Assembly: GCA_002269645.1 (NCBI GenBank) | Contig: NIVC01001502.1 | Coordinates: 1-64,000 of the forward strand | Length of the DNA: 64,000 bases | Direction of reading: 5' to 3' | Source: Macrostomum lignano | Taxonomy: Eukaryota | Shown here: positions 1-43,629 of the stretch, piece after piece | Layout of the letters: each line of letters begins with the position of its first letter | Position numbering within the stretch: the stretch's first letter is position 1 | Notes under the pieces: model-generated | What the model was told of the DNA's origin: nothing | What the model saw: the letters and a program-made list of their open reading frames with translations, nothing else | Databases searched by the model: none | Translations under genes and position numbers: made by a program

Positions 1-2769
1 CTTGAGCAGCGCATCCGCCACCGTAACCGCGTCGATCGCCGCCAGGGCTGCCGTCTCCATCCACTTGGAGAAGGCGTCGCACATGCTCAGGATGTACGCT
101 TTGCCATCAGTCGTACGCGGAAGCGGCCCTTTGATGTCGATCTGCACCAGCCGCCACGGAGCCGTCGGCTGGCACGTCGACTGTAGCGGCGCCTTCTGCG
201 GCTTGGTTGGACTCTTCTTGGCCAGGCAGACCGCACAGCTGGCCACCCAGTTCTCGACGTCCCGTCGCAGACCAGGCCACCAGCAGCGCTCAGACAATCT
301 CGCTCCGGTCTTGTCGACGCCGAGGTGTCCGCTCTGGTCACACGAGTGCGCCTGCTGCAGGAAATGTGGCCGCAGGTGACCGGGAATGACTGGCCGGCCA
401 CCGACCAGCAGGACTCCCGCCGAGCTCACCGAGGCCTCGTCCAGCAGCTCGCGAACCTGCGCCGCCCATGAATCGGACAGGCTGTCAATCCCTTCGGTCA
501 GCGCCTGGAACGCCTTGCTCAGCAGCGGATCTTGCAGTTGCTCCTCGTGCAGGCGGCTGTCGTCCCACCGAGGCTGCAGGCGCGTGCCGGCCACCCGGCT
601 CAGAGCATCCGGCACGACGTTGTCCATGCCAGGCCGGTACAGCAGCTCGAACGAAAACTGCTGCAGCGTAGAAAGCCATCGCGCCAGCCGACCTTCGGGG
701 TCCTTCGTTGCCAGCAGACCTTGCAGTGGCCGGTGGTCCGAGTAGACTCTGAAGCTCGGAACACTCAGCAGGTACGTCCTGAAGTGCTTCAAACTCCAGA
801 CAAGCGCCAGCAGCTCGCGGTCGGTCGCCGAGTAGTTGCGCTCGGCCTTGTTGAGGGTGCGAGAGGCGAACGCCACAGGCAGCTCGGCGTCACCGTGCAG
901 CTGGCTGAGCACCGCGCCGACGGCGAACTGACTGCTGTCGCAGCTGAGCACAAACTGCTTGGTGAAATCTGGCAGTCTCAGCACCGGAGCTGTCGTCAGC
1001 CGGTCCTTCAACTCGCGGAACGCTCGCTCGCAGTCGCTGCTCCACGCGAAGTCCCTCGATTTCACGCTGACGTCGTGCAGGACCCTCGCCGTCTGGCTGA
1101 AGCCTCGGATGAACCGGCGGTAGAAACCCAGCATTCCAAGAAACCGCTTCACCTCCTCGTTCGTCGTTGGGCTGGGCATGCTGCGAATGGCCTCGACCTT
1201 GCCGGGATCCGGTGCGATGCCCTGCTCGCTGATCAGGTGTCCCAGGTACAGCACCCGGCGATGGCCGAACGCGCTCTTGGCCTTGTGCAGCTTGAGTCCC
1301 GCGTCTCGCAGCCGCTTAAAAACTTCCGCCAGCCTCTCTAAGTGCTCGTCGAACGTCCTGCTGAAGACAATGATGTCGTCGATATAAGTCAGCACGGACT
1401 CCCAGGACAGGCCGGACATCACCAGCTCCATGAGCCGCTGGAACGTCGCCGGGGCATTGCACATCCCGAAGCCCATCTTGCAGAATTGCATCAGGCCGCG
1501 CGTCGAATAGAAAGCCGTCTTGTACCGGTCCTCCTCCGCCACCTCCACCTGGTGGTAGCCCTGCCGGCAGTCGATGGTGGAGAACCAGGAGCATCCGACA
1601 AGCGCATCCATGGCCTGCTGCAGGTGCGGCAGCGGGTATGCATCCTTGACCGTGCAGGCGTTGAGCTGCCGCCAGTCCGTGCACAGTCTGATGTCGCCGT
1701 TCTTCTTGCGGACCACCAGCAGGTTGCTGGCCCATGGCGATGTCGACGGTTCGATGATGCCGCTTTCCAGCATCTGACCGATCTTCTTGTCCACCTGGTC
1801 TCGCACAGACAGCGGCAGCCGGCGCTGGACCTGCCGGTGTGGCCGCGCTCCCGGCTCCAGCTCGATTTGGTGCTGCAGCAACGCCGTCGTGCCCAGGTCG
1901 TACTCGTGCCTGGCGAACAGGTCCTCGTTGCTCTCCAACAGCTGTCGCAGCCTCGCAGCATCCGGTTCGGGCAGCTCCGCGTTGATGTTCCAACCGACGG
2001 GGTTCTCCTGGGCCGCCTCCTGGCGACTGTCCCCGTCTGTCATCGCGCCTTCGAACGTGCCGACCGCCTTGTTGGCGTACAGCAGCACGGGCTCCTCTGC
2101 AAGGTTGCACATTTTCACCGGGATGCGGCAGTCGTCCGAGACCGCCAGCACGCGGCCCGGCAGGACGGCAGTGGACTTCACGAAGTCCTCAGACGGCTCA
2201 AAGACTCCCTGCTCGCCGCTGGAATCCACCTTGAGCCACACCAGCTTCTCGCTGCGGGCGGGCAGCTCCGTAGTTGCCGCCACACGCGCCACCAGGACAC
2301 TCGGCACCAGGCGACAATCTGCTCGAGCCGGCTCGCTGCTGAAAGGCACAGCTGTGCCGTCGAACCTGACGACGCCTTCTTTAATGTCAATGGTCATCGC
2401 CTGCGACACCTCGCCAATGAAGTCCATGCCGATGATCAGGCTGGGCTGGATGCCGTCCACGACTGTGAAGCGATGGCGCACGCGGATGGTCTGGCCGATC
2501 GAAACATCCGCTGCTGACAGGCCAAGGCAGCGCAGCCGGGATCCGTCGACAGCCGTCGGCAGCGCACCGATGTCGGTGGAGTCGATCTTGCACTGCAGTC
2601 TGTCGAACAGCGACTTGTCCATCAACGAAACTTGCGCGCCGGTGTCGAGCAGAGCAGGCGCTGACACGCTGCCAAAGTGCACCTTCACGAAGACTGAAGG
2701 CGCTGATCTGAGGGCCCCTTTTGAGCGGGTCGGTGCTGGCCCCAGGCTGCCGACCCTCAGAAGTTTCCC
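1..2769 (-). CDS. Gypsy pol polyprotein (protease, RT, RNase H, integrase), open to the window edge
   Basis: Absent from the ORF track, most likely because it runs off the edge with no stop. Hand translation of one frame gives LLDTGAQVS (2646), TYIDD (~1380), LSCDSSQFAVGAVLSQ (~940), WPGLRRDVENWVASCAVC and QIDIKGPLP...CDAFSKW (integrase, ~70-160). Confidence 0.93.
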
Positions 2770-3935
2770 TGCGGCTGACCAGTTGGTGTCGGGCACACCG
2801 CGGCGGAGTGACCCTTGCCTGAGCACCGGCTGCAGCGGCTGCCGATCGCCTTTGGGCACCGCCTAGCAATGTGACCCGGCTCGCCGCAGCTGAAGCACCT
2901 AATGGGTCCCTTCTGACGCCTGTCTCTTCCGGGTGGTCCCGTTCGCACGCTGGCTGTCAGCTTTCTTTCTTTCTTTTTCGGGTCACGGACATTGTAGCTA
3001 GACGTAGCTAATAGGACCGGGGGCGTAGCCCCATGCAGCCGGGGCGCTGACCCTGCGCGGGCGGCAGTAGACGGCGGAATCCAATTTGCGGCCTGCGGCG
3101 GGTGGCCAGAGAGCGTGGGGACCCGAGTCCCGGTGCGCAGGGCTCCTCCGCAGACCGACTTACGCTGTAAAAACCGCCATCCACCGCCAACCCAACGTTG
3201 GGGACAGCTCTCCCAGGCTGCATACCCGGAGGTGAGACCAATTCGTCACCCGTCGATGGCAGGGACGCACGGAGCTCCTGCCACATTGGCGGGGTGTCCA
3301 GGGGCGCGACGTGGACGCTGGTCTCGTGCCACCCCGGCTGTCAGCTGCTGCATCTGCTGCTCCAGCTGGCTCAGCCGTCTGTCTTCTACCGACACCGCGG
3401 CTGATGAGGCTGTAGTTGCGTGGCTCACCAGCTCAAGCTGCGCAGCTCTGTCGACGATGGCGGCCAGCGAACACGAGTCCGCGTCCTGGTCCTTCAACAG
3501 CGCATCTCTCACGGCAGATGGCAGGAGGCGCATCAGACGAAACTTCACGTCCTTTTCCCGAGCCGCCACGGAGTCGTCCGGGCGGGCCCGAAGGTGGAGA
3601 AGCTTCAGGCTGTAGGCGAGCTCCCTCAGCGACTCGTTGGGCTGTCGCTTTCGCTCTTCAAACTCCTCCATTGCTCTGTAGCAGCTCAGACTGTTGCCGA
3701 AGCACTCGATCAGCTTCTCCTTCAGCCTTTCATAGCTGGCTGACACGTCTGCCGGCTGCTCCCAGACGAAGATTTGCGCTTCTCCTGTCACCAGCAGTCT
3801 CAGCTTCTTTGCCTTCTTCTTGTCGTCCCATTCGCAGTCGTCGGCGAAGTCCTCAAACGTGCTTAGCCACATTCTCACGTTGGAGTCGCCGCTGAACTTT
3901 GGAGGCAATAAACTGGCTTGCTCTGATTTGGCCAT
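2757..3935 (-). CDS. Gypsy gag with two C-terminal CCHC zinc knuckles, interrupted by one in-frame TGA at 3246-3248
   Basis: ORF 3246-3935 (PPKFSGD...W...FE capsid-like). The knuckles CFSCGEPGHIARRC and CSRCSGKGHSAAVC (2757-2948) are in the same frame, and I found no other stop between them. Confidence 0.8.
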
Positions 3936-3941
3936 ACTGAG

Positions 3942-3954
3942 ACCGCTGCCACCA
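3942..3954 (-). promoter_or_regulatory. Primer-binding site complementary to the tRNA-Leu 3' end
   Basis: Minus-strand TGGTGGCAGCGGT (13 nt) matches the ...ACCGCTGCCACCA end of metazoan tRNA-Leu and lies 1 nt from the LTR CA end. Confidence 0.8.
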
Positions 3955-3955
3955 G

Positions 3956-4151
3956 TGTAAGACCGTGGGTTGAATTGCAGAGAATAACAAAACGTGAGGA
4001 GACCTCACTGGCTCACGCCAATATATTTATTGCCAAAGTTGGGGTGGGTGTAACCACCCTAAGCACGCACACGCCGCAGCGCTAAACCCCAACCCCCAAA
4101 CCAGCCAGACGTGCACATCTAAGTGCACGCGCACCAACAAGCCAGACTACA
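3956..4151 (-). repeat. 5' LTR of the gypsy element
   Basis: TG...CA termini, AATAAA on minus at ~4027-4032, adjacent to the PBS. Outer boundary uncertain. Confidence 0.6.
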
Positions 4152-4210
4152 GCTTAAATCCAGCGCTCACACCCAAATATGAAGCATGCTCTAAAGAAGC
4201 AACAACTCAC

Positions 4211-7200
4211 CCAAGAGAGCGCACTTCTCGTCCTCCTGTTTGACCTTCCTCACACATCGACCCAGAGCCTTCACAAACACAAAGTACACTGTGCTCACTG
4301 TCCTGTAGCCCCCTTCCGACACGCGCCCTGATTGACCGTCTTCTCCGGACACTCGTGCTTCAAGTCGACTCCGGGAGTAGACTTCTTCTTTTTCTTCTTG
4401 GCCTTCTCGCCGCACTTCTGATGCATGAAGTCTCTGTGAGCGATACAGCGACCTCGCTTCTCACTGTACTCATAGTGCTCGACGAGCACCTTTCTGGATC
4501 CGTCAATGCACGGTCCGGGCTCCATCACTCGTCGCTTCGGACACTTTTTACCTGGTAACGATTGAAGATTGAGAAGTATTGTAGCTCGACTGTTGTACCG
4601 GAATTGTGGCTAAGTACAGTACGTGCTCGAGATAATTAGTTGGTCTACTCACTCTTTGCAGCTCCTGTAGATCCTGAGGCAGCCTCTCTACACGGTTTTT
4701 CTCTCGCTCTGAACTTCTTCACGCACCGACCCTTGAGCTTGTTCCACTCGAAATAGACTGTGAGCCACCTTTGGATCCGGTCCTCGCAGCCTCCGACCTT
4801 CTTCACTCGCTTTGGAGGGCAGACTGAAATTATCGAAATGGGCAATTCAGTGTTAATCCAGAACTACCTGGAAAAATTCAAACACGTACTGTCGTATTTA
4901 CCTTTGGCTTTCTCATCACTGCAAGTGATTGTGATCTTCTTGGACTTTTTCTCGCATCGACCTTCCAGATCTCTCTTGAATGTGTAGACGATGTTAGTGC
5001 GGTACCCGTTCACGCAGGGTCCGACTTCTTGAGTGACGTCCGCTGGGCAGCTCTTGTTTTTCACTGAATTTTCAATATAAAGTGTATATTATATCATATA
5101 ACTTTGCTTTTTAGCTTCAGAAGTAAACGCCTGCACTTAAAAGAAGCAGACTATGGCGAAAAATCCGTATTTCAGTTTTTACTTCATTACTGTGAGTATT
5201 GTAAACTACTTGCACTTGTTAAAGCCCTGCTTAACGTCATAATTCGATACATACTCGTAATCAATGACGATGTATGAAAAAATTACAGGCCTAAATATGT
5301 AGATGAAATATCCTTTTGTGGACGAATCATTGTTGTTCTAAGAAAAAAAGGCTTGAATGCGTTTAGTAGAAAATCGTAGCTATCCCTCAATTTGTCGCCA
5401 TGCGTTCGGGTATTAAAATTTTTGCGTTATGTTTATACGAGCGTACACAAAAACTTTCACTACATCAAGATCAAAGTACGTGTACATTAGATCCTGATGC
5501 ATACAAGCTATTCAAGCCATGGCGAGAGCTGTTAAGACCAACGACAAATTGCAGGTGCACGAACTTTTAAGCTTTTAAACAGAGCAACGGATAATAATTC
5601 ATTGGATGCTGACCTCAACCCTGCTGCGCATACTAAGATTACATGAAGTAAGTGAAGCGCTATAAGTGTAGTAACGGTGGGCGCAAAAAATGCAATCATT
5701 ACGAGCGTACCTATTTGTTTCAAAAAATACACTTTTGGGCCCACTTCACGCTGCTAACCGACTGTTGAGAGAAACTTTGGTTTCATGTCTGAGCTGCTAA
5801 CTAGCAGAGCCAGCCAGTTAACAGCAAGGTTGTGCCATAGGCAAACATCTACATGTATGTGGGGGCGAATATGGCTCTTTTAAAGCGAGAAGGCTCAAAT
5901 ATTCGGAGCTCGCTGACGTTGGGCCAGTGAAGCGGCATTTCGTGACTTCGAATTCAAATTTGTCACTGTCGATTCAGAAGGCCCATTTGCATCCCAGAGT
6001 ACGTCTGATAGAAACTAATGGGTGCGTAGCATCGCAAAGTGGTCAGCGTTTGCTCACGTGCGCTCAAGCTTCTACTTCTTGGCGCATCGTATTCCAACTT
6101 CGGGCCAAAAGACCCCCGCCAGAAATTGAACGTAATTCTGGGTTCATTCGGAAGCGCTGCTAAAAGTCATCAGCGGCGGCGAAATTCATGCGATCTTTAA
6201 ACTCTCTCGGCAGACGACTATCGACCGGGAGATCAGCTGCTTGAAGCGCGTCGAAAAGTGGAATCTCCATTCTTAGTCGCCTATCAAGGATGCTAAACTT
6301 TAGCTCGTGAAGACAAAAGTTAGCAGGCTGGTAAAAATCTGTTTACAACAGCTAGACTCATAAAACCAAAAGTTCACTAGCAGCTGTGAAATACAGTGTA
6401 ACAGTTAGCAGTGCTTCATGAAATTGGTCCCTGAGGTGTTTAAAAATCCTGCCTTGGTGTGGTGCCACACTCAGACAGAAGAACAGTTCCGGAGACAATC
6501 AAAACATTTATAGTACGTCTTTGCAGCAGTTTCTGCCTTTCTGCCTGACTGAAAATATCAGTCTCGCCATAAAGGTAGAGTACAAGCGGTTAAATGCAGT
6601 AGCTAATACCATTAAGTGCAAGGTAAAACAACATACAAGACAAGATAGAATTACTCGTACTGCATGGTACAGTGGGGATCAAAAAATCATATCGAAAAAT
6701 TATTTTTTGATTAAAATATTGCTAATGTCTTACCCAGCAAGGCGCACTTCTCGTCCTCCTGCTTGACCTTCCTCACACATCGACCCAGAGCCTTCACAAA
6801 CACAAAGTACACTGTGCTCACTGTCCTGTAGCCCCCCTTCCGACACGCGCCCTGGTTGACCGTCTTCTCCGGACACTCGTGCTTCAGGTCGACTCCGGGA
6901 GTAGACTTCTTCTTTTTCTTCTTGGCCTTCTCGCCGCACTTCTGATGCATGAAGTCTCTGTGAGCGATACAGCGACCTCGCTTCTCACTGTACTCATAGT
7001 GCTCGACGAGCACCTTTCTGGATCCGTCAATGCACGGTCCGGGCTCCATCACTCGTCGCTTCGGGCACTTTTTACCTGGAGACGATTGAAGATTGAGAAG
7101 TATTGTAGCTCGACTGTTGTACCGGAATTGTGGCTAAGTACAGTACGTGCTCGAGATAATTAGTTGGTCTACTCACTCTTTGCAGCTCCTGTAGATCCTG

Positions 7201-10200
7201 AGGCAGCCTCTCCACACGGTTTTTCTCTCGCTCTGAACTTCTTCACGCACCGACCCTTGAGCTTGTTCCACTCGAAGTAGACTGTGAGCCACCTTTGGAT
7301 CCGGTCCTCGCAGCCTCCGACCTTTTTCACTCGCTTTGGAGGGCAGACTGAAATTATCGAAATTGGCAATTCATTGTTAATCCAGAACTACCTGGAAAAA
7401 TGCAAATACGTACTCTCGCATTTACCTTTGGCTTTCTCATCACTGCAAGTGATTGTGATCTTCTTGGACTTTTTCTCGCATCGACCTTCCAGATCTCTCT
7501 TGAATGTGTAGACGATGTTAGTGCGGTACCCGTTCACGCAGGGTCCGACTTCTTGAGTGACGTCCGCTGGGCAGCTCTTGTTTTTCACTGAATTTTCAAT
7601 ATAAAGTGTATATTATATCATATAAATTTGCTTTTTAGCTTCACAAGTAAACGCCTGCACTCAAAGAAGCAGACTTTTGCGAAAAATCCGTATTTCAGTT
7701 TTTACTTCATTACTGTGAGTATTGTAAACTACTTGTAGTTGTTAAAGCCCTGCTTAACGTTATAATTCGATACATACTCGTAATCAATGATGATGTATGA
7801 AAAAATTACAGGCCTAAATATGTAGATGAAATATCCTTTTGTGGACGAATCATTGTTCTAAGAAAAAAAGGCTTGAATGCGTTTAGTAGAAAATCGTAGC
7901 TATCCCTCAATTTGTCGCCATGCGTTCGGGTATTAAAATTTTTGCGTTATGTTTATACGAGCGTACACAAAAACTTTCACTACATCAAGATCAAAGTACG
8001 TGTACATTAGATCCTGATGCATACAAGCTATTCAAGCCATGGCGAGAGCTGTTAAGACCAACGACAAATTGCAGGTGCACGAACTTTTAAGCTTTTAAAC
8101 AGAGCAACGGATAATAATTCATTGGATGCTGACCTCAACCCTGCTGCGCATACTAAGATTACATGAAGTAAGTGAAGCGCTATAAGTGTAGTAACGGTGG
8201 GCGCAAAAAATGCAATCATTACGAGCGTACCTATTTGTTTCAAAAAATACACTTTTGGGCCCACTTCACGCTGCTAACCGACTGTTGAGAGAAACTTTGG
8301 TTTCATGTCTGAGCTGCTAACTAGCAGAGCCAGCCAGTTAACAGCAAGGTTGTGCCATAGGCAAACATCTACATGTATGTGGGGGCGAATATGGCTCTTT
8401 TAAAGCGAGAAGGCTCAAATATTCGGAGCTCGCTGACGTTGGGCCAGTGAAGCGGCATTTCGTGACTTCGAATTCAAATTTGTCACTGTCGATTCAGAAG
8501 GCCCATTTGCATCCCAGAGTACGTCTGATAGAAACTAATGGGTGCGTAGCATCGCAAAGTGGTCAGCGTTTGCTCACGTGCGCTCAAGCTTCTACTTCTT
8601 GGCGCATCGTATTCCAACTTCGGGCCAAAAGACCCCCGCCAGAAATTGAACGTAATTCTGGGTTCATTCGGAAGCGCTGCTAAAAGTCATCAGCGGCGGC
8701 GAAATTCATGCGATCTTTAAACTCTCTCGGCAGACGACTATCGACCGGGAGATCAGCTGCTTGAAGCGCGTCGAAAAGTGGAATCTCCATTCTTAGTCGC
8801 CTATCAAGGATGCTAAACTTTAGCTCGTGAAGACAAAAGTTAGCAGGCTGGTAAAAATCTGTTTACAACAGCTAGACTCATAAAACCAAAAGTTCACTAG
8901 CAGCTGTGAAATACAGTGTAACAGTTAGCAGTGCTTCATGAAATTGGTCCCTGAGGTGTTTAAAAATCCTGCCTTGGTGTGGTGCCACACTCAGACAGAA
9001 GAACAGATCCGGAGACAATCAAAATATTTATAGTACGTCTTTGCAGCAGTTTCTGCCTTTCTGACTGACTGAAAATATCAGTCTCGCCATAAAGGCAGAG
9101 TACAAGCGCTAAATGCAGTAGCTAATACCGTTAAGTGCAAGGTAAAACAACATACAAGACAATATAGAATTACTCGTACTGCATGGTACAGTGGGGATCA
9201 AAAAATCATATCGAAAAATTATTTTTTTGATTAAAATATTGCTAATGTCTTACCCAGCAAGGCGCACTTCTCGTCCTCCTGTTTGACCTTCCTCACACAT
9301 CGACCCAGAGCCTTCACAAACACAAAGTACACTGTGTTCACTGTCCTGTAGCCCCCCTTCCGACACGCTCCCTGATTGACCGTCTTCTCCGGACACTCGT
9401 GCTTCAAGTCGACTCCGGGAGTAGACTTCTTCTTTTTCTTCTTGGCCTTCTCGCCGCACTTCTGATGCATGAGTCTCTGTGAGCGATACAGCGACCTCGC
9501 TTCTCACTGTACTCATAATGCTCGACGAGCACCTTTCTGGATCCGTCAATGCACGGTCCGGGCTCCATCACTCGTCGCTTCGGACACTTTTTACCTGGTA
9601 ACGATTGAAGATTGAGAAGTATTGTAGCTCGACTGTTGTACCGGAATTGTGGCTAAGTACAGTACGTGCTCGAGATAATTAGTTGGTCTACTCACTCTTT
9701 GCAGCTCCTGTAGATCCTGAGGCAGCCTCTCTACACGGTTTTTCTCTCGCTCTGAACTTCTTCACGCACCGACCCTTGAGCTTGTTCCACTCGAAGTAGA
9801 CTGTGAGCCACCTTTGGATCCGGTCCTCGCAGCCTCCGACCTTCTTCACTCGCTTTGGAGGGCATTCTGCAATGAGTTTTTGAGCAGCAAAATCACACTC
9901 GTTTGCTACTGTCAGCAGCCAATCTAAACCAGAAACTCACCAGTTGCTTTCTTCGATCTGCAGGGGCTAGTAACCTTCTTCACATTCTTTTGGCAGTGTC
10001 CCTCGGTGTTGCGCGAGTAGTGATAAAGAATGCTGGTGCGGAAACCGCTCTTACAAGGCCCTGTCTCCACGGTGTCGTCAGATGGACAAGCTTCTGTGGC
10101 AACTTTATAAAAAATGGAAAGTAGCTATTAGTTAGAAATTTTTATCATATAAGTAAATCTTTGAGCGGATGCGGAAATTTAGTGTTACCCAACGCGGCGC

Positions 10201-12903
10201 ACTGCTCCCGTTTTAGTGCTACGTGTTTGATGCAGCGTTTCAAATCGGCTGAGTAGGTATAGCTGAAGGTGAACAAGTTTCGATAGCCCATCTTGCACGG
10301 ACCCTGGGAGTAGGCCTTGTCAGGACATTCCTCGGCTTTGGTTGTTTTGTCTTTGGTCTTCTTTGGCTTGTGTTTTCCGCAAGTCTTGACAGTAAAGGTG
10401 CGCTGCTCCTTGCATCGGCCAGTTTTCGGATCGGGTTCGTAGTGCGCCACAAGCACTCGTGTCCGGCCGTCCGTGCATGGACCCGGCTCCAGTACGCGCG
10501 GCTTTGGGCACACGCCCGGTTTGTGCTTGCCGCAGGGCCGATTCTCGATGCTGAATTTGCGAACGCATCGGTTGCCTTCCTTCTTGATGCGCTCGTAGTA
10601 CTGTCGGGTGATGTGCCGCAGGCCGTCAACGCATGGTCCCTGCTTCAGTACGTTTGGCGGACAAGGCTGCTCTTCCGTTTCGCCATCGCCGCAACTCTCT
10701 GTTACGCTGTGCGAGCTTTCGACGCACTTGCCAGCTGGATCTCGTGAGTATTCGGTGCGAATCAACGTCCTGAAGCCGTCTTTGCAGCGGCCTCTCTCGA
10801 CAACTTTCGGCGATGGACAACGTTTCGCTGGATCTGAATTTTGGGAATTAAAGCTCTGAAGCTTGGGAATTGCGAACTTTTGGGTGAAGCAAGAAGCGTA
10901 AATTGTGCTGTGATTGCTGGAAACTTACCAGAAGCGCCGCAAGCCTCCACATTTATAGACGTCTTTTCAATGCATTCGTGTGCAGAACTGCTACCAGGTT
11001 TAGCTTTGCCGCGAATGTAATAAAACTTGAACACCTGTCTGTGCCGACCGGTGCAAGGCTTCTGGTAGTATCGCGGCTCCGGACACCCGTCGGAGTCATC
11101 CTTACCACCCGGCTTCTTTTTCGGACAGTTCGGGTAGGCGAAGTCTTTGTGCAGGACGCAGCCGCCTTTGCCGTCCGGCTCGTAGTGCATCACCAGCGTC
11201 TTCTGCCGATTGTTGCGCCTGTTGCAGGACCCTGGCTCCACCGTTCTCGGCTCCGGGCATACGCCTGAGTGGGGGTATCGAGAATAAGAATTTATTTTTT
11301 TATTAGAGGCAGAAGCTGTGTGCACCCTGACGCTCTTCAAGCGACATTGTCGCATAACCGGCGAGAGGCATTACTGCCCATTTTGTCGACGACGCCTGAG
11401 CAGGCACACAAGTGCGCGGATTTTTCATTCGCACAGGCACACACACGCAGGAGTTTACAGTGAGCCTAATTTTATTTATCGTCAGGCATGCGTACACTTC
11501 ATTTTGCCTTGTGGGTTAGCCCCTACGTCCTGGGCATTGATTAAGACCGTGAGCGTGAGGCACAGTAGATTTCTTAAAGAACTTGCCATTTTCGGGGTTT
11601 ATGCTTGAGTGTTCATTATCATCCGAGGCTCTTTGATAGGTGCGTGCTGTCAGTTGAAGGGCTGTTTTTGGGAAAGCATAGTCATTTTATGGAGGACTAC
11701 AATTAGAGAGACTTTCTTTGGAATGTTGTCGTTATTAGTTAAGGTTATTAGTGTGGTTATTACTTCGTAGTTAAGGGCTGTTAGTTGATTTGATGTAGAT
11801 GGCGTCGAAAGTTCAAGTGGAGCAAGTACTCGTAGACCCGTAGACCTGTTGCACTGCTGGAAACTCCAGATGGCAGGCCACATTATCTGTGTCGGGTTGT
11901 ACTGTTCAAATTTAAACATACGTACATGCTTTCGCAGGAGGGTTCTGGGCACCCTTTCGCAACAACTTCGGCGACATCTTTCAGCAAGCAGTGCTGAGCC
12001 AGTTCTGTCTATTCCACTGATTTCTGGGCACATAAAAATATGGAAACGCAGGCAGGCATGCGTGCACTCAGCTTTTAGTCGACTGCCTGCTAGCTGATGG
12101 CGACGCCGCCCCAGACAGATCAGGCCTACGTTTGCTTCAAAGCCTTGTGACGCTGTTTTCACTTTAATTTTAATTGAGATCTTTGTCAGAGCTTTGTCTT
12201 TGTTTCTTTGTTTGGTAATCGGGCGTAAAGAATATCTGAAAACAGAGTTGAGAATTTCTAGACAATAAAAATCATTTACTCCCACCTTTTTTAGCGCCGG
12301 CTTTGTCGCAAGAGACCTCTTTTAATTGTATGTTCCTCTGGCACCGATTCAAATAGGGATTCCATTTGTAGAGCGTGATCACCACGCTTTGAAGTCCGTC
12401 AGTTCGACAAGCCGACTTAGTCTCCGATCTTGGAGGGCAACCTGCTAGGCCAAGTCGTTTGATTAAATTCTTACGCCATGGTTAAAGTCTATAAATAGTA
12501 AACACTACTGTACAACATATATCTGTCGCTTTGATCGAGAGCTTGTAAGGTTTACTGTCTTCCACGATGTGAAATTTCGATCTTGTGAAAGCAATCCGTA
12601 GTGAATCAACATCAGAAGAATCAGTGAATCAGATACAGAATGCTACAGCATCAATCACAGTTTCCATGCTCACAAAAGAGAAAATTCTCAAATCTCTATA
12701 TTGGCATGGAATGTTTACGCAATTGGCACTGTCTGACAATGAGAAAGTTCGTGCAGTGCAGATGCTACACCTGTGTATCCTACCAGCCTACAGTACCTAC
12801 CATGCTCGGAGCCTGACTTTTTGCACTGTCCGCAGTCCAGCAGCAGCAAAATCAGTGCCAGCAAAAGTAAAATTGGCGGCAATAGCCGCTGCCGCCTCAT
12901 CAC
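4211..12903 (-). CDS. Secreted Lys/Arg-rich protein of tandem 4-Cys modules (12 exons in window, 3' end beyond the gypsy insertion)
   Basis: Signal peptide MMRRQRLLPPILLLLALILLLLDCGQC. Exons, all GT-AG with phase-1 introns: 12903-12801, 11264-10929, 10833-10189, 10093-9941, 9866-9696, 9594-9254, 7587-7426, 7347-7177, 7075-6734, 5063-4902, 4823-4653, 4551-4211. Exons 6 and 12 are each 1 nt short (341 vs 342). Confidence 0.85.
4219..9863. repeat. Near-identical tandem duplication, period ~2520-2524 bp, ~2.2 units
   Basis: Matching ORFs recur at the offset: 5532/8052, 5927/8447, 6734/9254, 4645/7169. Confidence 0.95.
5737..6431. mobile_element. Old MITE-like element (Harbinger-like termini), duplicated at 8257-8951
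   Basis: Imperfect inverted ends: gggcccacttca...ctgctaac versus reverse complement gggaccaatttcatgaagcactgctaac, plus an internal inverted match (gaaactttggtttcatg / gaacttttggttttatg). No clean TSD. Confidence 0.4.
11650..12285 (-). mobile_element. Possible highly decayed non-LTR RT remnant in intron 1 of the Cys-rich gene
   Basis: Weak resemblance to LINE RT motifs in the expected order (SQGFEANVG; SALLAE; YEYL in another frame). No YADD. Confidence 0.25.
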
Positions 12904-15900
12904 GGCTTTTGAAATTGGACGAACAACGATGCGTCAGCGACACGTCAAGGGAGACTGCGGCTTGTTTTTGCTCGAATAGCCAGCTACTGAAATAGTCCTC
13001 TCCCCCAGCAGAGTACTAAGTTTAGTCTCTCGCTGGTCTCAGTCAACTTTAGCCGAGCACAGCAGCGTACAAAGAAATACAAAGAAATGAAATTTCTCCC
13101 CTCAGAGAGGGCGCCAAGGCTCAGCTGGGGTTGGTGACTGGCCCTGCTGGGAGGGCATTACTGGACAGAGCGGAGACAACAGCAGATTCGCCTTTTAGAA
13201 ATTCGCATCGATCGATGAGTGGGAAAGCAAGGAGAAGCAACGAAAAGCCTTCTAGAGGAAGCTCTTCTAGCGATGTCAGGAAGGCAAAGAATCTTCTACC
13301 AGCAGTTTCTACATAGTTGCATGCAGCCAGATATGCAGTTCCAGCGAAGCCTAATACGCTCTCAGTGGGAGCATATAGAAGCGGAATTCAGCTGGATCCA
13401 CACTCACATTGGCAAGTTCTATAGCACACAGCAGCAGTTGTTGACAGTGAGACTTGTCCGCCTGACAATATATAATCCCTTAGCGTAGGCATATTGTTAA
13501 AATATTTGATAATTTAGAATTTTGGATTTTAAACATCAAAGGATGCAAACTGTATGGACAGCCAATGTACAGTTATACTGTTTATAACATATTGTAACAT
13601 CGATTTTTAGAGTTCATATACAGAGCTCTAGAAGACTAATACTCACTTTAAGGTTCTCTATATACATGTATATAGCGGCTAAAATGTATACGTGAATGCA
13701 CATAATTCAAATAACACTACCGCGTGCAATATTTTAACGCGACCCACTCAAGTTCTCTAGCTTTAGAAAAATCATAAATTTAGTAATTTAGCTGATGCTT
13801 CTACTACTTGTACGTCCAGTAATACACTTGGAAGATCGAGCTGAATAAACCCTTTACATGTCAGATATGAACAGCGATGTCGGTGGAAACTTTCACATCA
13901 CCCGACGCTCAGCTGATTGATGGCGTCGACATTCTCCAGAGCAATTTAAAAATTACTTTTTGCACGTGACTTCCTACATGTACGATGTCGGTTACTCCTC
14001 GTCCTCGTACATGTACGTCGGAATGTTCCACGTGACTAGGACTCATTAAAGCTGTTACGTTCTTAACTTGTCCTTGCACGAGACATGAACATGCTCCGCT
14101 GTGCAGTATAGTCGAAAAACTTTATAAATGAACTCTGATAGGAAATACGTACACAAACACTTCGCATCTACTGATACTGTGATATCCTGTACGAAATTTA
14201 AGCTACAGTAGTGTAGTGCCCTCCTTTTTTATAGAAATCTTAGTATAAGCTACATGTACATGTACATGCATCTGAATATATTTCAATGTACAATGTCTAC
14301 ATGTATTTACGCACATGTATTTGATATAACTCGGGATGAATAATTACCTGTTATATTTTAATTCATATGCCCTATTTAGTTGATTTAAATCTCTAGCTCT
14401 AATTAGCGATTGCGAAAAGTTGAGCATGCGTATAGATTATTTGAACGGAACGGCATATTGGGCAATAGGCGTTGGATTTACATGTACAGAATAAAACTGT
14501 GAAATTGAATGCTTGCATGTGCATGTTCATACACAGTACATGTAATTGCATCGGAGCCGATTTCACGCACCTACCAGCTGTCTGCCAAGGACTACTAAAT
14601 AGTAGATTCTTTGACCTATGCATGCATGTACAGTTTAGTATGTGGAATTGTATATAGTATATCTCAGTGTGACCATTTGCATGCGCAGGCTCTTGTAGTT
14701 TTGATCAGATTGCTATAAATTGCTATAAATTGCTATATTAATTGTTTACATGTACAAATGAGCTATGAAAGATCTACAAGCTAGCTGCGCGCAGTCTATT
14801 TAGTCAATTTACATTCCATACAGTGACGCCATTTCACTTGAAAGAAAGCAGTTTAATCAAAGAACTTTGACACTAAGTTATTTGGGGCTGATGATTTTCT
14901 TTGTGGGCACCCATGCAATATCATAATTATATGTAGATGGGCTCTATATCATTAGGGACGAGTCTACAGCACGTACTTTAGAGACCAGTAGAATGGTCGA
15001 TGATCATTAAAGCGACACCGACTGCTGGGGGGGGGGGGTACAGCAAGTAATGGTAGAGTCTTCTGGATTAGTGAATAACCGCACAGTAAGAAATCAAAAA
15101 CGATCGTGATAATCAGGATTGCGAAATCTGCGCTCTGCTTTTATGAGACGTGGCGTACGAGCAAGATCGTAGTCGTAGAAAGATTCAGGTTGTTGCAGTT
15201 TATGTTAAAACATGCATGCAATTTTCATGACATAGAGGTAGCTTAAGTAAATCTAATCATTAGAAAAATAACGGGCAGAATTTCGATTCGCGATATGAAA
15301 ACAACGTATTCTTTCTATACAATCGGTATACTGCCAATGTAGGAAACAACGCGATTTCTCTCACTATGGAACCGAACCAAAACGGTAATATTTTAGAAAC
15401 CCCTTTTTTGGTCCGATATACTATTGGAAGGTAAAGAGAGGGTAGCGGTGAAAGTTGACTGTAGTTTTTAATTTAAAAACTCACAGTGCTCCTAGACCTG
15501 ATTTAAAAATTAACTGAGGGGCAATTAAAGTTTTTTTGGTTTAAATTTTACGTAGAAATTGTCTTATAAATAGAGTTATTAGAATGTAGTATGGAATTCG
15601 CATAGTATTCATTTTTACATTTAGATGATTTAACTGCCTAAGCGTTAATAACGAAACACGAACTTTAAATAAAATATAATTTAATGATCGCGCCAGATTT
15701 TTTAACGTAACAAGTAACAAGTTTGGTAGAAAGAAAGGTACTAAACTTGATAGAAAACCAGAAAACGCCAATTCTACTCATTAAGCATAGTTGTGGTAGT
15801 GGTAGCCTAGCCTTTAGTTAGTATTGCATTTATTAAATAGTTTTTATAAAAGTTTACTGTAGATTGTTATGTCTAATTGAATCTCCGATTTTTGTCAAGT

Positions 15901-15930
15901 AGCTGACATTTTCAGATTTAATCAAGCAAA

Positions 15931-18900: not shown

Positions 18901-19875
18901 AGACAACTCCCTGGACTTCCAGCCCATCGGCACGGTCGAACACCTTAGGCATTAGAGGGTACGTTGAGCAGTACCACAGCCTGCGGACTGGCGAGCCAGA
19001 GCAGCATACCCAAGTTTGGCAAAAGCCACTGGATGGGTAGCCAGCGCCGGAGCCCAGTCTGTCCGGCAGCCCTAGGGTCCACCTTGAACACTCGCGGGGA
19101 CGGGTACCCTGGGTCGACTTGCGAGACAGCGTGGGGGGGGGTGGTCTGCGGCTGCCAGCGGCAAATAGAGGTTGCAGAACTCCCACCAGCCTTAACCTGC
19201 TGAAGATGGGGGCAGGCGTGAAGCATCGCAGACCGTAGCCCATAGGCCTGTTTTGTCTCATACTTCACTGGCATGTTGAATACACCTTAACGAGCGCAAA
19301 AGCACTGAATTAATGTAAGAATCGAACTCAGTACTTTAGCGTGACAGTCCCAGTTAATCTGTCCTTCCATCTAAATCTTTATCAAGATTGTTTCTGAACT
19401 TTCAAAACCAATTTTTACCTTTAACAGAGAGAAAAAGCAGAAGATTTTGGACATTAAAAAGAACATTCGCGACGCCATCCTGTCCATCACGGGCGCCATG
19501 AGCAATCTGACGCCGCAGATTTCGCTAGAGCACGCCGATTACGAGCCTTACATCGAATACCTGCAGACTGAGGCGCCCAAGCCCGACTTCGACTACCCAG
19601 AGCAGTTCTTTCGCTACACGGCGCTGCTTTGGCAGGACTCGGGCGTCAGGGCCTCCTTTGACCGGTCCAATGAGTACCAGCTGATCGACTGCGCCAAGTA
19701 GTGAGTCTGGAGCTCTGCTTTGGTGGCGAGTTGAGGCTGTCTGTCTGTTTGTCTGCCTGTCTCTCTGTTTGTCTGTCAGCCTGTCCGCCTGTCTGTTTGT
19801 CTATCTGTCTGTCTGTCTGTCTGCCTGCCTGTCTGTCTGTCTGCCTGTCTGTCTGTCTGTCTGTCTGTTTGTCTA

Positions 19876-19930
<55 letters not shown>

Positions 19931-42393: not shown

Positions 42394-43030
42394 ACCATTC
42401 ACAATTGATACCATTCACAATTGATACCATTCACAATTGATACCATTCACAATTGATACCATTCACAATTGATACCATTCACAATTGATACCATTCACAA
42501 TTGATACCATTCATAATTGATACCATTCACAATTGATACCATTCACAATTGATACCATTCACAGCTGATACCGTTCACAATTGATACCATTCACAATTGA
42601 TACCATTCACAATTGATACCATTCACAATTGATACCATTCATAATTGATACCATTCACAATTGATACCATTCACAATTGATACCATTCACAGCTGATACC
42701 GTTCACAATTGATACCATTCACAATTGATACCATTCACAATTGATACCATTCACAATTGATACCATTCACAACTGATACCATTCACAATTGATACCATTC
42801 ACAACTGATACCATTCACAATTGATACCATTCACAATTGATACCATTCACAATTGATACCATTCACAACTGATACCATTCACAATTGATACCATTCACAA
42901 TTGATACCATTCACAACTGATACCATTCACAATTGATACCATTCACAATTGATACCATTCACAATTGATGCCATTCACAATTTATACCATTCACAACTGA
43001 TACCATTCACAACTGATACCATTCACAATT
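42394..43030. repeat. 16-bp minisatellite (accattcacaattgat), ~40 copies
   Basis: Direct reading. Confidence 0.97.
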
Positions 43031-43629
43031 CATACCGTTCAAAATACACGCCATTCACAGTTCACGCCCTTCCTCTTTAACACCATTCACAGTTAATACC
43101 CTCCGCCATCATTCACCTCCATTCACTATTCACACTTCACGATTCATTCAATTAACCATTCACAACATTCAAAGCGCATACTATTCACAACTCTCGCCAT
43201 TCAAATTTTTGCGCCATTAATAATTCACGCCATTTACCATTCTCATATTGACAATCTCAATGCAAACTTCATTGGTGAGATTCACCATGCTACCAATATT
43301 TCGCAGCTTAAACCAAGTTTTACTTGCACAGCAGACTGGCTATAATTGTCACCTGTTTTACAGCTTGGCAATAAAATGATAATATTGTAGTTTAAATAAT
43401 TCTTTGCTCCCCTGTACGTTGTGAAATACCATGAGAAATGCGTTCACTTATCAAAATTAGTGGACCCGATTCTACTAGCCTACTGCAAGTAGAAAGTTAA
43501 GCATGTATATATAAAAATGGTTGTTATTTATTTATCTGACAAACGATACGCATGAGTTGCCGTATGTTAAACGGTTGTCACTTTTGTCATTCAGTTTCTA
43601 CACCTAAATTCGTTGTTTCCCCTCCGACG

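What the first reader, a model, noticed from the sequence alone, without database searches (positions are those of the whole stretch)
4211..12903. Secreted basic protein made of at least 18 copies of an unassigned 4-cysteine module
Seen: after a signal peptide, splicing yields a chain of ~44-aa modules with consensus C-P-x(6-8)-G-x-C-x(2)-G-x-R-x(5-6)-[YF]-x(6-9)-G-x-C-x(10)-C, separated by short Lys-rich linkers (e.g. GEKAKKKKKK). There are 18 modules in the window and the gene continues off the edge. Four subtypes recur in fixed order as a ~225-aa super-repeat, in both old diverged exons (2-6) and young duplicated ones. All introns are phase 1, as established for shuffled extracellular modules. 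Inference: a disulfide-stapled beta-hairpin module, reminiscent of a TSP1 repeat lacking WxxW, in a polycationic secreted scaffold such as an adhesive, mucus/rhabdite, seminal or defensive protein. I cannot match it to a named domain.
Basis: partly seen in the sequence, partly recalled or inferred. Interest (0 to 1): 0.85.

Follow-up and report, generated by a model that had tools for sequence, protein, structure and literature searches.

The report
Flatworm secreted basic four-cysteine repeat protein
This is a real, expressed gene of the flatworm Macrostomum lignano for a secreted, strongly positively charged protein built only from some 20-24 copies of a small four-cysteine beta-sheet module that no domain database names; its function is still unknown.

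Summary
On the minus strand, 12900-4211, there are 13 exons. All have AG/GT borders and all introns are phase 1. They encode a signal peptide followed by 19 modules (not 18) of 43-49 aa with four invariant Cys. The modules fall into four subtypes in fixed order, [bcd][abcd]x4.

The window is the first 64 kb of M. lignano contig NIVC01001502.1. The gene is BOX15_Mlig001823g1 ("hypothetical protein"; transcript RNA815_5324.1). It runs off the contig end inside a Ty3/gypsy retrotransposon that sits in intron 13. Sister contigs supply five more modules and the stop codon.

Two exons (7 and 13) carry 1-nt deletions. These are probably assembly errors.

Two tryptic peptides of the protein appear in published mass spectrometry of worm "footprints", so it is translated.

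Pfam and PDB sequence searches and Foldseek give no significant match. AlphaFold predicts a three-stranded antiparallel sheet (pLDDT 91.5). The only link to thrombospondin type 1 repeats (TSRs) is indirect, through a metagenomic 4-Cys TSP_1-like module.

Relatives are few: another transcriptome, a monogenean flatworm and some metagenome contigs.

Most likely role (inferred): a multivalent binder of polyanions or glycans in a secretion. Moderately interesting as an unnamed, apparently flatworm-restricted domain family.

The parts
12801..12900 (-). Exon 1: start codon and signal-peptide-like N-terminus (MRRQRLLPPILLLLALILLLLDCGQC...), ending in a phase-1 donor G|GTAGGT
   Evidence: P0001 begins identically. 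The homologues P0004 and P0005 also start with hydrophobic leaders. Signal peptide is by inspection; no predictor was run.
12286..12441 (-). Exon 2: one module (subtype b). Contains the MS-detected peptide TDGLQSVVITLYK.
10929..11264 (-). Exon 3: two modules (subtypes c, d)
10189..10833 (-). Exon 4: a complete old super-repeat of four modules (a, b, c, d) with no internal intron
   Evidence: AF2 model of this stretch: pLDDT 70.7, three strands per module.
9941..10102 (-). Exon 5: one module (subtype a)
9696..9866 (-). Exon 6: one module (subtype b). First exon of young tandem unit 1.
9254..9594 (-). Exon 7: two modules (c, d). 341 nt: one base is missing next to 9472 relative to exon 10, which shifts the frame in this assembly.
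   Evidence: The intact equivalent is seen in P0023.
7426..7587 (-). Exon 8: one module (a)
7177..7347 (-). Exon 9: one module (b). Start of young tandem unit 2.
6734..7075 (-). Exon 10: two modules (c, d), intact. Contains the MS-detected peptide TVSTVYFVFVK, which is also present in exon 13.
4902..5063 (-). Exon 11: one module (a)
4653..4823 (-). Exon 12: one module (b). Start of partial young unit 3.
4211..4551 (-). Exon 13: two modules (c, d). 341 nt: one base is missing in the homopolymer at 4309-4313. The GenBank model P0001 stops here (…ACRKGATGQ*). The exon ends in donor G|GTGAGT.
   Evidence: The equivalent exon in L002 is intact.
4211..9866 (-). Young tandem genomic duplication. Units of 2519 and 2524 nt plus a 613-nt partial unit, each holding exons b, c+d, a and a 1.66-kb intron. 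Units are about 98.5% identical in exons and introns alike.
   Evidence: Copy number differs between contigs: L002 and L006 have one unit fewer.
4152..4210 (-). 5' part of intron 13 (59 nt), up to the retrotransposon insertion site (4-bp target-site duplication AAGC)
1..4151 (-). Ty3/gypsy LTR retrotransposon inside intron 13. 5' LTR 4151-3956 (196 bp, TG…CA), PBS-like TGGTGGCAGCGG next to it, gag ORF 3935-3246, pol (protease-RT-RNaseH-integrase) 2862-1, cut by the contig end.

Best explanation
SHOWN.
- Window 12900-4211 (minus strand) is the 5' three-quarters of Macrostomum lignano gene BOX15_Mlig001823g1 (transcript RNA815_5324.1 / RNA1509_20408).
- It encodes a signal-peptide-bearing, strongly basic protein of roughly 1050-1350 aa, depending on copy number.
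- Apart from short linkers, the protein consists only of 20-24 tandem copies of a 43-49-aa module with four invariant cysteines. No database assigns this module.
- The modules come in four subtypes in the fixed order [b c d][a b c d]n[a].
- The gene grew by exon and segment duplication. The latest event is a 2.5-kb tandem genomic unit that varies in number between contigs.
- The coding sequence is under purifying selection, and the protein is translated.

PREDICTED.
- Each module is a three-stranded antiparallel beta-sheet.
- It is presumably stapled at both ends by two disulfides. A C1-C3 / C2-C4 pairing is inferred from strand register only.

INFERRED MECHANISM.
- After secretion the protein acts as an extended, protease-resistant string of rigid, positively charged beads (+2 to +10 per module) joined by Lys-rich linkers.
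- It would bind polyanions multivalently: sulfated or acidic glycans of mucus, glycocalyx, egg or partner surfaces, or microbial surfaces. This would cross-link or condense a secretion.
- Functionally this is analogous to heparin binding by the basic sheet faces of TSR and midkine/pleiotrophin domains, and to the cohesive role proposed for the Lys/Arg-rich regions of Mlig-ap1 in the same animal.
- Which gland makes it is not known.
For: Gene model: all 13 exons have AG/GT borders and all introns are phase 1.

Identity: 100% identity to NIVC01001502.1 and to P0001.

3' end: taken from sister contigs and from models P0003 and P0023.

Expression: peptides TDGLQSVVITLYK and TVSTVYFVFVK are assigned to a 1054-aa, pI 10.0 protein of a complete-CDS transcript, in a footprint-MS dataset whose first sheet is 'footprints_Trypsin_intact_1' (PMC6410801).

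Selection: among young copies, 7 synonymous versus 2 non-synonymous changes (unit 1 vs unit 2). Between window and L002, 6 versus 1.

Fold: single-module AF2 model has pLDDT 91.5 with strands at 6-14, 17-28 and 33-44. The same pattern appears in all four modules of the super-repeat model.

Charge: modules +2 to +10, linkers up to +5, net about +166 for the 24-module form. The basic character is shared by the closest homologues P0004, P0007, P0014 and P0015.

Family reality: full-length four-Cys module matches in P0004 (E 4e-53), the monogenean protein P0005 (6e-38), P0008 (5e-17) and others. Subtype order is conserved in P0004 and P0007.

TSR-like lead: hhalign of the module alignment against the 4-Cys TSP_1-type module of P0016 gives probability 91.6% and score 27.0, versus at most 13.6 in 40 shuffles that keep the Cys columns fixed.

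Polyanion-sensitive adhesion chemistry in this species is documented in PMC6410801.
Against: - No binding, localisation or knock-down data exist for this gene. The function rests on composition and analogy.
- The footprint proteome also contains vitellogenin, ribosomal proteins, VCP and similar, so presence there does not prove secretion or an adhesive role.
- The monogenean homologue is nearly neutral (pI 8.0) and P0008 is N-glycan-rich rather than polycationic. Charge is therefore not a family-wide property.
- This particular genomic copy has two frameshifts and no 3' end.
- The signal peptide was judged by eye.
Confidence: 0.5

Rival explanations
1. Polyprotein precursor. The Lys/Arg-rich linkers would be cut by proprotein convertases or other proteases. 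This would release many cationic ~45-aa disulfide-stabilised peptides acting as antimicrobial or defensive (toxin-like) effectors.
For: Modules are small, cationic and Cys-stabilised. Several linkers contain KK/KR/RR (DPAKR|CP, KSKK|CP, RRVKK|CP, KKKKKK). Copy number expands rapidly.
Against: There is no consistent dibasic site at both ends of each module. Several junctions have none (SCGDGETEEQPCP, CAALVATEACP, CALLVKNKSCP, CKGSTADCL). The fixed a-b-c-d order, conserved in homologues, suggests that the array works as a unit. The MS data give no information on processing.
Confidence: 0.12
2. The same kind of polycationic scaffold, but specifically a reproductive secretion: seminal fluid or prostate, cement or shell gland, or egg-coat protein. 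Repeat number would then evolve fast under sexual selection.
For: Copy-number variation between near-identical contigs. The family has very few and very diverged relatives, as is typical of reproductive proteins. Egg-derived proteins (vitellogenin-like) dominate the footprint sample in which it was found.
Against: The transcript IDs are absent from the held supplements of the seminal-fluid ISH screen, the positional RNA-seq paper and the germline/neoblast lists. These are weak negatives, because the files may be truncated. Synonymous changes predominate, with no sign of positive selection.
Confidence: 0.15
3. This copy is a decaying, non-functional duplicate in a neopolyploid genome. The frameshifts in exons 7 and 13 and the intronic retrotransposon would be real lesions, and only the sister copies are functional.
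For: Two 1-nt deletions break the frame. GenBank model P0001 skips E7-E9 and stops at the E13 shift. At least four genomic copies exist, so redundancy would allow decay.
Against: The sister contig L002 has its own single-base indels at different places (exon 4, and the E7 equivalent at another position) while its E13 equivalent is intact. Such scattered indels, one of them in a homopolymer, are what uncorrected long-read errors would produce (my reading; the assembly method was not checked here). Substitutions remain overwhelmingly synonymous. The retrotransposon is intronic, has a clean 4-bp TSD, and is present in all copies including those with complete ORFs.
Confidence: 0.15
4. A bona fide member of the thrombospondin type 1 repeat / midkine-pleiotrophin superfamily, acting as a heparin-binding signalling or matrix ligand in the manner of those proteins.
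For: An indirect profile link through P0016, whose modules pass Pfam TSP_1. A three-stranded antiparallel sheet is predicted. Exons are phase 1-1. The Cys spacing C-x9-10-C-x20-21-C-x10-C resembles the midkine C-domain spacing C-x9-C-x21-C-x9-C, read from the PDB-verified sequence. Pleiotrophin 2n6f is the only small secreted protein in the Foldseek list, but at E=0.19.
Against: No Pfam hit to TSP_1 or PTN_MK at E<=10 for any family member. hhalign probability is below 1% against canonical TSRs and both midkine domains. There is no Trp ladder, no CSxTCG motif and only four Cys. Foldseek with the high-confidence single-module model returns only generic three-strand fragments at E>0.3.
Confidence: 0.08

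Closest known systems
Thrombospondin type 1 repeat (TSR; Pfam TSP_1, PF00090)
   Same: An extracellular module of about 45-55 aa, typically on a phase 1-1 exon. A long three-stranded antiparallel sheet stapled by disulfides. A 'G-x-C ... G-x-[RQ]-x-R'-like stretch at the start of the second strand. Basic faces that bind sulfated glycans (established knowledge for TSRs). The module family aligns with a metagenomic 4-Cys module that passes Pfam TSP_1.
   Different: No WxxW Trp ladder. Four instead of six Cys, and no CSxTCG or O-fucosylation motif. No Pfam hit even at E<=10. No direct profile-profile signal. Foldseek retrieves no TSR structure.
Midkine / pleiotrophin domains (Pfam PTN_MK_N, PTN_MK_C)
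   Same: Small TSR-like three-stranded sheets with two or three disulfides. Very basic proteins with Lys-rich unstructured tails. The midkine C-domain Cys spacing (C-x9-C-x21-C-x9-C; sequence checked) is close to that of this module. Heparin binding is the mechanistic analogy used here.
   Different: No detectable sequence or profile similarity (hhalign probability <1%). Midkine and pleiotrophin have two domains, not 20-24. They are cytokines of about 13-15 kDa. The Foldseek match to 2n6f is not significant (E=0.19).
Mlig-ap1, the cohesive adhesive protein of M. lignano (Wunderer et al. 2019, PMC6410801)
   Same: Same species. Secreted. Extremely Lys/Arg-rich. Found in footprint mass spectrometry. 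Proposed to act by electrostatic binding to negatively charged glycans, and inhibited by heparin.
   Different: In Mlig-ap1 the charge lies in low-complexity KR regions that flank known domains (C-type lectin, vWD, EGF). Here the charge sits on folded four-Cys modules. No homology was detected: neither Mlig-ap1 nor Mlig-ap2 appears among the hits. No expression or RNAi data link this gene to the adhesive glands.
Unnamed homologues: Logan transcript protein P0004 (SRR26183987), Cichlidogyrus casuarinus KAL3314387.1 (P0005), metagenome proteins P0008, P0011 and P0020
   Same: The same four-Cys module, CP-x7-9-C-x2-4-G-x-[RQ]-x6-[YF]-x5-9-C-x10-C, in tandem arrays behind a signal peptide. P0004 and P0007 keep the a-b-c-d order.
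   Different: Fewer modules (8-9 in P0004 and P0005). The monogenean gene is intronless and its product near-neutral. P0008 is N-glycosylation-rich. P0011 and P0020 have long acidic or Ala/Gln-rich spacers.

Membership tests
Thrombospondin type 1 repeat (Pfam TSP_1 PF00090 / TSP1_spondin) | Match to the family HMM at or above the gathering score | tested here: not met
   No TSP_1 hit at E<=10 for the 637-aa protein, five single modules, or nine homologues.
Thrombospondin type 1 repeat (Pfam TSP_1 PF00090 / TSP1_spondin) | WxxW(xxW) tryptophan ladder on the first strand | tested here: not met
   The alignment of 48 modules shows no conserved Trp between Cys1 and Cys2.
Thrombospondin type 1 repeat (Pfam TSP_1 PF00090 / TSP1_spondin) | Six-cysteine framework including CSxTCG | tested here: not met
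   There are exactly four invariant Cys per module and no CSxTCG motif.
Thrombospondin type 1 repeat (Pfam TSP_1 PF00090 / TSP1_spondin) | Profile-profile similarity to bona fide TSRs | tested here: inconclusive
   Direct hhalign against six TSP1/properdin TSRs gives probability 0.3%. Against the 4-Cys modules of P0016, which pass Pfam TSP_1 at sequence level (31.7 bits, cut-off 21.6), it gives probability 91.6% and score 27.0, versus at most 13.6 in shuffles.
Thrombospondin type 1 repeat (Pfam TSP_1 PF00090 / TSP1_spondin) | Elongated three-stranded antiparallel fold with a layered Trp/Arg core | tested here: inconclusive
   AF2 gives three antiparallel strands at pLDDT 91.5. Foldseek against PDB retrieves no TSR, and the best hits are generic at E>0.3. 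The core and disulfides could not be inspected.
Midkine / pleiotrophin (PTN_MK_N, PTN_MK_C) | HMM or profile similarity to the N- or C-domain | tested here: not met
   No Pfam hit. hhalign probability is 0.4% for the C-domain and 0.8% for the N-domain, using PDB-verified sequences.
Midkine / pleiotrophin (PTN_MK_N, PTN_MK_C) | Two-domain architecture with Lys-rich tails, in a cytokine of about 13-15 kDa | tested here: not met
   There are 19 modules in the window and 24 in the conceptual full protein, and the transcript product is 1054 aa.
Midkine / pleiotrophin (PTN_MK_N, PTN_MK_C) | Heparin / glycosaminoglycan binding | not testable with these tools
   Requires recombinant protein and heparin-affinity or SPR assays.
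SUEL-type (rhamnose-binding) lectin, the UniProt automatic name of P0002, P0026 and P0027 | Match to Gal_Lectin (PF02140), with its YGR / DPC / KYL motifs | tested here: not met
   Pfam scan of P0002 at E<=10 lists no Gal_Lectin. The sequences consist only of the four-Cys modules.
von Willebrand factor type D domain, the UniProt automatic name of P0025 | Presence of a VWD domain | tested here: inconclusive
   By inspection, P0025 is made only of the same modules. Its near-identical cluster mate P0002 shows no VWD hit. P0025 itself was not scanned.
Unnamed flatworm four-Cys module family (defined here) | C-[P]-x7-10-C-x19-27-C-x10-C module in tandem arrays behind a signal peptide, with a significant match to the module HMM | tested here: met
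   In the exhaustive search the M. lignano paralogues or alleles score E 1e-242 to 1e-164, P0004 4e-53, P0005 6e-38, P0007 9e-20 and P0008 5e-17. The matches are full-length module matches.

The most novel reading that the evidence does not exclude
The module founds a previously undescribed domain family, specific to flatworms (Rhabditophora). Its ancient four-subtype super-repeat (a-b-c-d) would predate the split of macrostomids and parasitic Neodermata. In Macrostomum it would have been turned into a giant folded polycation serving as a glycan-cross-linking (cohesive) component of the material the worm deposits on surfaces. That would be a structured counterpart of the disordered Lys/Arg regions of Mlig-ap1, and a candidate part of the temporary-adhesion or mucus chemistry.
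Probability: 0.2. Interest if true: 0.6.

Novelty: new variant of a known kind. Interest (0 to 1): 0.4.

Why it matters
If confirmed, this adds a new small disulfide-rich extracellular domain family that Pfam currently lacks. It also shows that the automatic UniProt names ('SUEL-type lectin', 'VWFD') for this gene are unsupported.

It offers a compact, high-confidence fold that may be a Trp-less, four-Cys offshoot of the TSR-like sheet.

The protein is a folded polycation found in the deposits of an animal whose reversible adhesion is known to depend on charge interactions with glycans. It is therefore a concrete, testable candidate for mucus or adhesive cohesion, and of possible interest for biomimetic glues.

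The locus also illustrates very recent exon-block amplification, copy-number variation and assembly problems in the neopolyploid M. lignano genome.

It is not a fundamentally new kind of system. Secreted tandem arrays of Cys-rich modules on phase-1 exons are a classic metazoan theme.

Tried and rejected
- Pfam on the protein, single modules and homologues. There is no consistent family. The isolated hits are repeat-summed noise (EVH1_PP4R3 at 28 bits in P0002, ARMET_N, Colipase-like).
- PDB sequence search with the protein and with a module profile: 0 hits.
- Foldseek against PDB with the 4-module model and with the single-module model: nothing at E<=0.001. Pleiotrophin appears only at E=0.19, and the single module returns generic three-strand fragments such as ribosomal S17.
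- hhalign against midkine/pleiotrophin N and C domains and canonical TSRs: no signal.
- A word-indexed search with the 46-module alignment found no candidates because the sequences are too short. A search with the monogenean protein found only itself.
- Several low-scoring hits of the exhaustive search were rejected as unrelated hairpin or low-complexity repeats: P0009, P0010, P0012 (cEGF/TNFR-like), P0013 (RHS repeats), P0017 and P0018.
- Relation to the 221/255-aa repeats of Mlig-ap2: not supported. No such protein appears among the hits, but its sequence was not compared directly.
- Literature and supplement look-ups for Mlig001823, Mlig000808, RNA815_5324 and RNA1310_5181 found nothing. 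They covered six sources: full-text search, Grudniewska 2016 and 2018, Arbore 2015, Weber 2018, and a 2026 differential-expression paper. Tissue of expression therefore remains unknown.
- The 1054-aa length of the published transcript product could not be reconciled exactly with any exon combination (902, 1127 or 1352 aa expected). This is probably repeat collapse in the short-read assembly.

Full report
**1. What is in the sequence**

Reading the minus strand of 13000-4200 gives 13 exons: 12900-12801, 12441-12286, 11264-10929, 10833-10189, 10102-9941, 9866-9696, 9594-9254, 7587-7426, 7347-7177, 7075-6734, 5063-4902, 4823-4653 and 4551-4211. Each is bounded by AG and GT. Every intron is phase 1, and every internal exon is a multiple of three bases long except exons 7 and 13, which are 341 nt where exon 10 is 342.

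Exon 1 encodes MRRQRLLPPILLLLALILLLLDCGQC…. By inspection this is a signal peptide; no predictor was available.

The remaining exons encode 1, 2, 4, 1, 1, 2, 1, 1, 2, 1, 1 and 2 modules.

Alignments of 12, 17 and then 48 modules show four invariant Cys and a nearly invariant Pro after Cys1. G-x-C, G-x-[RQ] and an aromatic residue are frequent.

The four subtypes a, b, c and d recur in the order [bcd][abcd][abcd][abcd][abcd]. Aligned super-repeats are 36-42% identical to the first.

The product is very basic: K 14.8%, R 8.6%, pI 9.7. The charge sits on the modules (+2 to +10 each) as well as on linkers such as GEKAKKKKKKSTPG. A few linkers are acidic or neutral.

A loose four-Cys pattern scan over all six frames finds 22 module matches on the minus strand within 12439-4412. 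It also returns five plus-strand matches elsewhere in the window, which are low-complexity or compositionally unlike the module; no further module copy is evident.

**2. Where it comes from, and the 3' end**

The protein search returned only M. lignano proteins. Window 1-22900 is 100% identical to the start of GenBank contig NIVC01001502.1 of assembly GCA_002269645.1. The gene is BOX15_Mlig001823g1, a 'hypothetical protein' (P0001).

That GenBank model skips exons 7-9 and terminates at the exon 13 frameshift.

The gene does not merely leave the window. It leaves the contig.

Downstream of exon 13 there are 59 nt of intron, followed by a Ty3/gypsy LTR retrotransposon. Its features are:
- a 196-bp LTR at 4151-3956;
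- a gag ORF at 3935-3246;
- a protease-RT-RNaseH-integrase ORF at 2862-1.

The sister contig NIVC01000834.1 (L002, 98-99% identical) carries the same element at the same site, with a 4-bp target duplication AAGC. Without the element, the intron would be about 87 nt. L002 then continues with three more exons encoding a-b-c-d-a modules and a stop codon (…ACVEKKVVP*).

Model P0023, from a third contig, gives an uninterrupted ORF with the same three young units as the window. The conceptual full protein for this haplotype is therefore 1352 aa with 24 modules. L002 has one unit fewer, giving 20 modules.

**3. The duplications and the frameshifts**

Exons 6-8, 9-11 and 12-13 belong to tandem genomic units of 2519 and 2524 nt. 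These differ by 1.6% in exons and 1.3% in introns, so the duplication is very recent.

Substitutions are mostly synonymous:
- unit 1 vs unit 2: 7 synonymous, 2 non-synonymous;
- exon 10 vs exon 13: 7 synonymous, 0 non-synonymous;
- window vs L002: 6 synonymous, 1 non-synonymous.

This pattern indicates purifying selection.

The two 1-nt deletions lie next to 9472 and in the homopolymer at 4309-4313. They are not shared with L002's last unit. L002 has its own single-base indels in exon 4 and at a different place in its exon 7 equivalent. I read this scatter as long-read assembly error rather than true decay, but only read mapping can settle it.

**4. Expression**

Tryptic peptides predicted from the protein were searched in the supplements of Wunderer et al. 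2019 (PMC6410801). TDGLQSVVITLYK (exon 2) and TVSTVYFVFVK (subtype d) were found as high-confidence identifications.

They are assigned to transcript RNA1509_20408_2 = RNA815_5324.1 = RNA1310_5181. That transcript is 3164 nt, typed 5UTR_CDS_3UTR, and encodes 1054 aa (119.4 kDa, pI 10.0) with no annotation. The identifications are in Dataset S2, whose first sheet is 'footprints_Trypsin_intact_1'.

The gene is therefore transcribed, spliced into a long ORF and translated. The protein is present in material the worms leave on a surface.

That sample also contains vitellogenin-like, ribosomal and other cellular proteins. The finding is therefore compatible with secretion but is not specific evidence of it.

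The transcript IDs were not found in the held supplements of the seminal-fluid ISH screen, the positional RNA-seq study or the germline/neoblast lists. These are weak negatives.

**5. What the module is**

- Pfam gives no hit at E<=10 for the protein or for single modules, and no consistent hit for nine homologues.
- PDB sequence and profile searches give nothing.
- AlphaFold2 on a single module with a 17-sequence alignment gives pLDDT 91.5 and three antiparallel strands at 6-14, 17-28 and 33-44.
- The four-module model repeats this pattern at pLDDT 70.7, with undefined inter-module geometry (pTM 0.28).
- Foldseek against PDB gives no significant match. Pleiotrophin 2n6f appears at rank 10 (E=0.19) for the long model, and the short model returns only generic three-strand pieces.

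The TSR and midkine idea was tested directly. Sequences were first verified against PDB entries. hhalign of the 48-module alignment against midkine/pleiotrophin N and C domains and against TSP1/properdin TSRs gives probabilities below 1%.

The exhaustive HMM search did pick up a metagenomic protein, P0016 (E=8e-5). It has repeated four-Cys modules of the form CPAPGAWSAWGPCVDGVQTRTRTNYDDLPGC…C. These pass Pfam TSP_1 at sequence level (31.7 bits against a cut-off of 21.6).

hhalign aligns the flatworm family with these modules over 41 columns, including all four Cys. The probability is 91.6% and the score 27.0, against a maximum of 13.6 in 40 shuffles that keep the Cys columns fixed.

This is a genuine sequence resemblance to a TSR-like module, but it is indirect. 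Membership in the TSR superfamily is left as inconclusive.

The automatic UniProt names of older models of this gene ('SUEL-type lectin domain-containing', 'VWFD domain-containing') have no support. Those sequences are nothing but the same modules.

**6. Relatives**

HMMER read all 1.84 billion representative proteins and found 19 hits at E<=0.001. The true full-module matches are:
- M. lignano models;
- P0004, a 502-aa signal-peptide protein from a 1.7-kb transcript contig of run SRR26183987;
- P0005, from the monogenean Cichlidogyrus casuarinus (KAL3314387.1; 426 aa, eight modules, intronless gene);
- short ENA fragments P0007, P0014 and P0015;
- JGI metagenome proteins P0008 (964 aa, many N-x-S/T sites), P0011 and P0020 (modules separated by acidic and Ala/Gln-rich spacers), and P0019.

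Subtype-specific HMMs classify the P0004 modules as c-d-a-b-c-d-a and the P0007 modules as a-b-c, with clear margins. So the a-b-c-d order is conserved there.

In the monogenean protein, four of eight modules have the expected subtype as best match, and all eight have it within the top two. This is suggestive only.

Strong positive charge is shared by the closest relatives but not by the monogenean protein or P0008.

**7. How it most likely works**

Shown: a signal-peptide-bearing, translated, selectively maintained array of 20-24 small Cys-stabilised modules with a large net positive charge.

Predicted: each module is a rigid three-stranded sheet.

Inferred: the protein acts outside the cell as a multivalent polycation that binds and cross-links polyanionic glycans or surfaces. 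The analogy is with the basic sheet faces of TSR and midkine/pleiotrophin domains (established knowledge), and with the charge-based cohesion proposed for Mlig-ap1 in the same animal. In that animal, heparin blocks attachment and free Lys/Arg blocks release (PMC6410801).

I give this about 0.5 overall. That is near-certain for identity and architecture and about 0.4 for the mechanism.

The rivals are:
- a polyprotein precursor of cationic peptides, weakened by the lack of regular cleavage sites;
- a specifically reproductive secretion, which remains open;
- a decaying duplicate, for this copy only;
- a true TSR/midkine-type ligand, for which defining features are missing.

**8. Novelty**

The sequence is already in GenBank and UniProt as an uncharacterised protein, and its transcript sits unremarked in a supplement. 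The searches run here found no description of the module.

It is best called a new variant of a known kind: a new four-Cys extracellular repeat module, possibly a Trp-less TSR-like derivative, in a classic phase-1 exon-shuffled tandem array.

It is of moderate interest to domain curators and flatworm biologists. It would be of higher interest if it proves to be part of the adhesion or mucus chemistry.

Noticed in passing
window 1-4151 (minus strand): An apparently intact Ty3/gypsy LTR retrotransposon. It has a 196-bp LTR, a PBS-like TGGTGGCAGCGG, a gag ORF and an open PR-RT-RNaseH-INT ORF of more than 954 aa. GC is about 63% against about 45% around it. It is inserted with a 4-bp TSD (AAGC) into an ~87-nt intron. 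The 5' LTR is 100% identical to the 3' LTR on L002, suggesting a young element, yet it is shared by all gene copies examined.
   Followed up: partly
L006 = NIVC01001502.1 224491-241570 (the other end of the window's own contig): A second, complete copy of the same gene lies in inverted orientation at the far end of the same 241.6-kb contig. It is 99.4% identical to L002. Its homology to the window begins only about 190 bp upstream of the ATG. This is either a real segmental duplication or an assembly chimera of the neopolyploid genome.
   Followed up: partly
UniProt entries A0A1I8JML5, A0A1I8JKC7, A0A1I8JLU0, A0A1I8I7P7 (P0002, P0026, P0027, P0025): Older gene models of this locus are auto-named 'SUEL-type lectin domain-containing' or 'VWFD domain-containing'. 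They contain only the four-Cys modules, and Pfam finds neither domain. These are likely false profile hits on Cys-rich repeats.
   Followed up: yes
L002 exon 4 and exon 7 equivalents; window 9472 and 4309-4313: Different near-identical copies of the gene carry single-base indels at different coding positions. This suggests residual long-read errors in assembly GCA_002269645.1 that truncate or distort the deposited gene models (P0001, P0003, P0024).
   Followed up: partly
window 19737-45323: A dense set of satellite and minisatellite arrays, for example 22 bp x 106 (22841-25168), 20 bp x 95 (29163-31063), 30 bp x 29 (20683-21525), 16 bp x 41 (42394-43045) and 38 bp x 44 (43633-45323). The last of these creates spurious long ORFs at 43587-45476.
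   Followed up: no
window 46425-48215 (+), 51985-52662 (-), 38065-38862 (+), 55322-57718 (+), about 15900-22900: Other coding features. There is an intronless-looking amiloride-sensitive sodium channel (ASC, E=6e-81), a mariner-type transposase remnant (HTH_48 / Transposase_1), an Ion_trans fragment and a DUF1258 ORF. A G-alpha gene lies upstream of the repeat-protein gene, per the GenBank gene calls on L005.
   Followed up: no
P0016 (JGI metagenome protein, 597 aa): A protein that combines an N-terminal PASTA domain, long YSFTP repeats and four 4-Cys TSP_1-like modules retaining WSAW. It is an unusual, probably bacterial, TSR-like architecture, and it is the only bridge between the flatworm module and TSRs.
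   Followed up: partly
P0006 (UniProt A0A1I8JCP9): A model that joins exon 1 to a point inside exon 2, through an alternative donor (…CAAAAA|GTCAGG) and an internal acceptor, and is translated out of frame upstream. It is either a non-productive splice variant or a prediction artefact. It does reproduce the exon 2-exon 3 junction.
   Followed up: no
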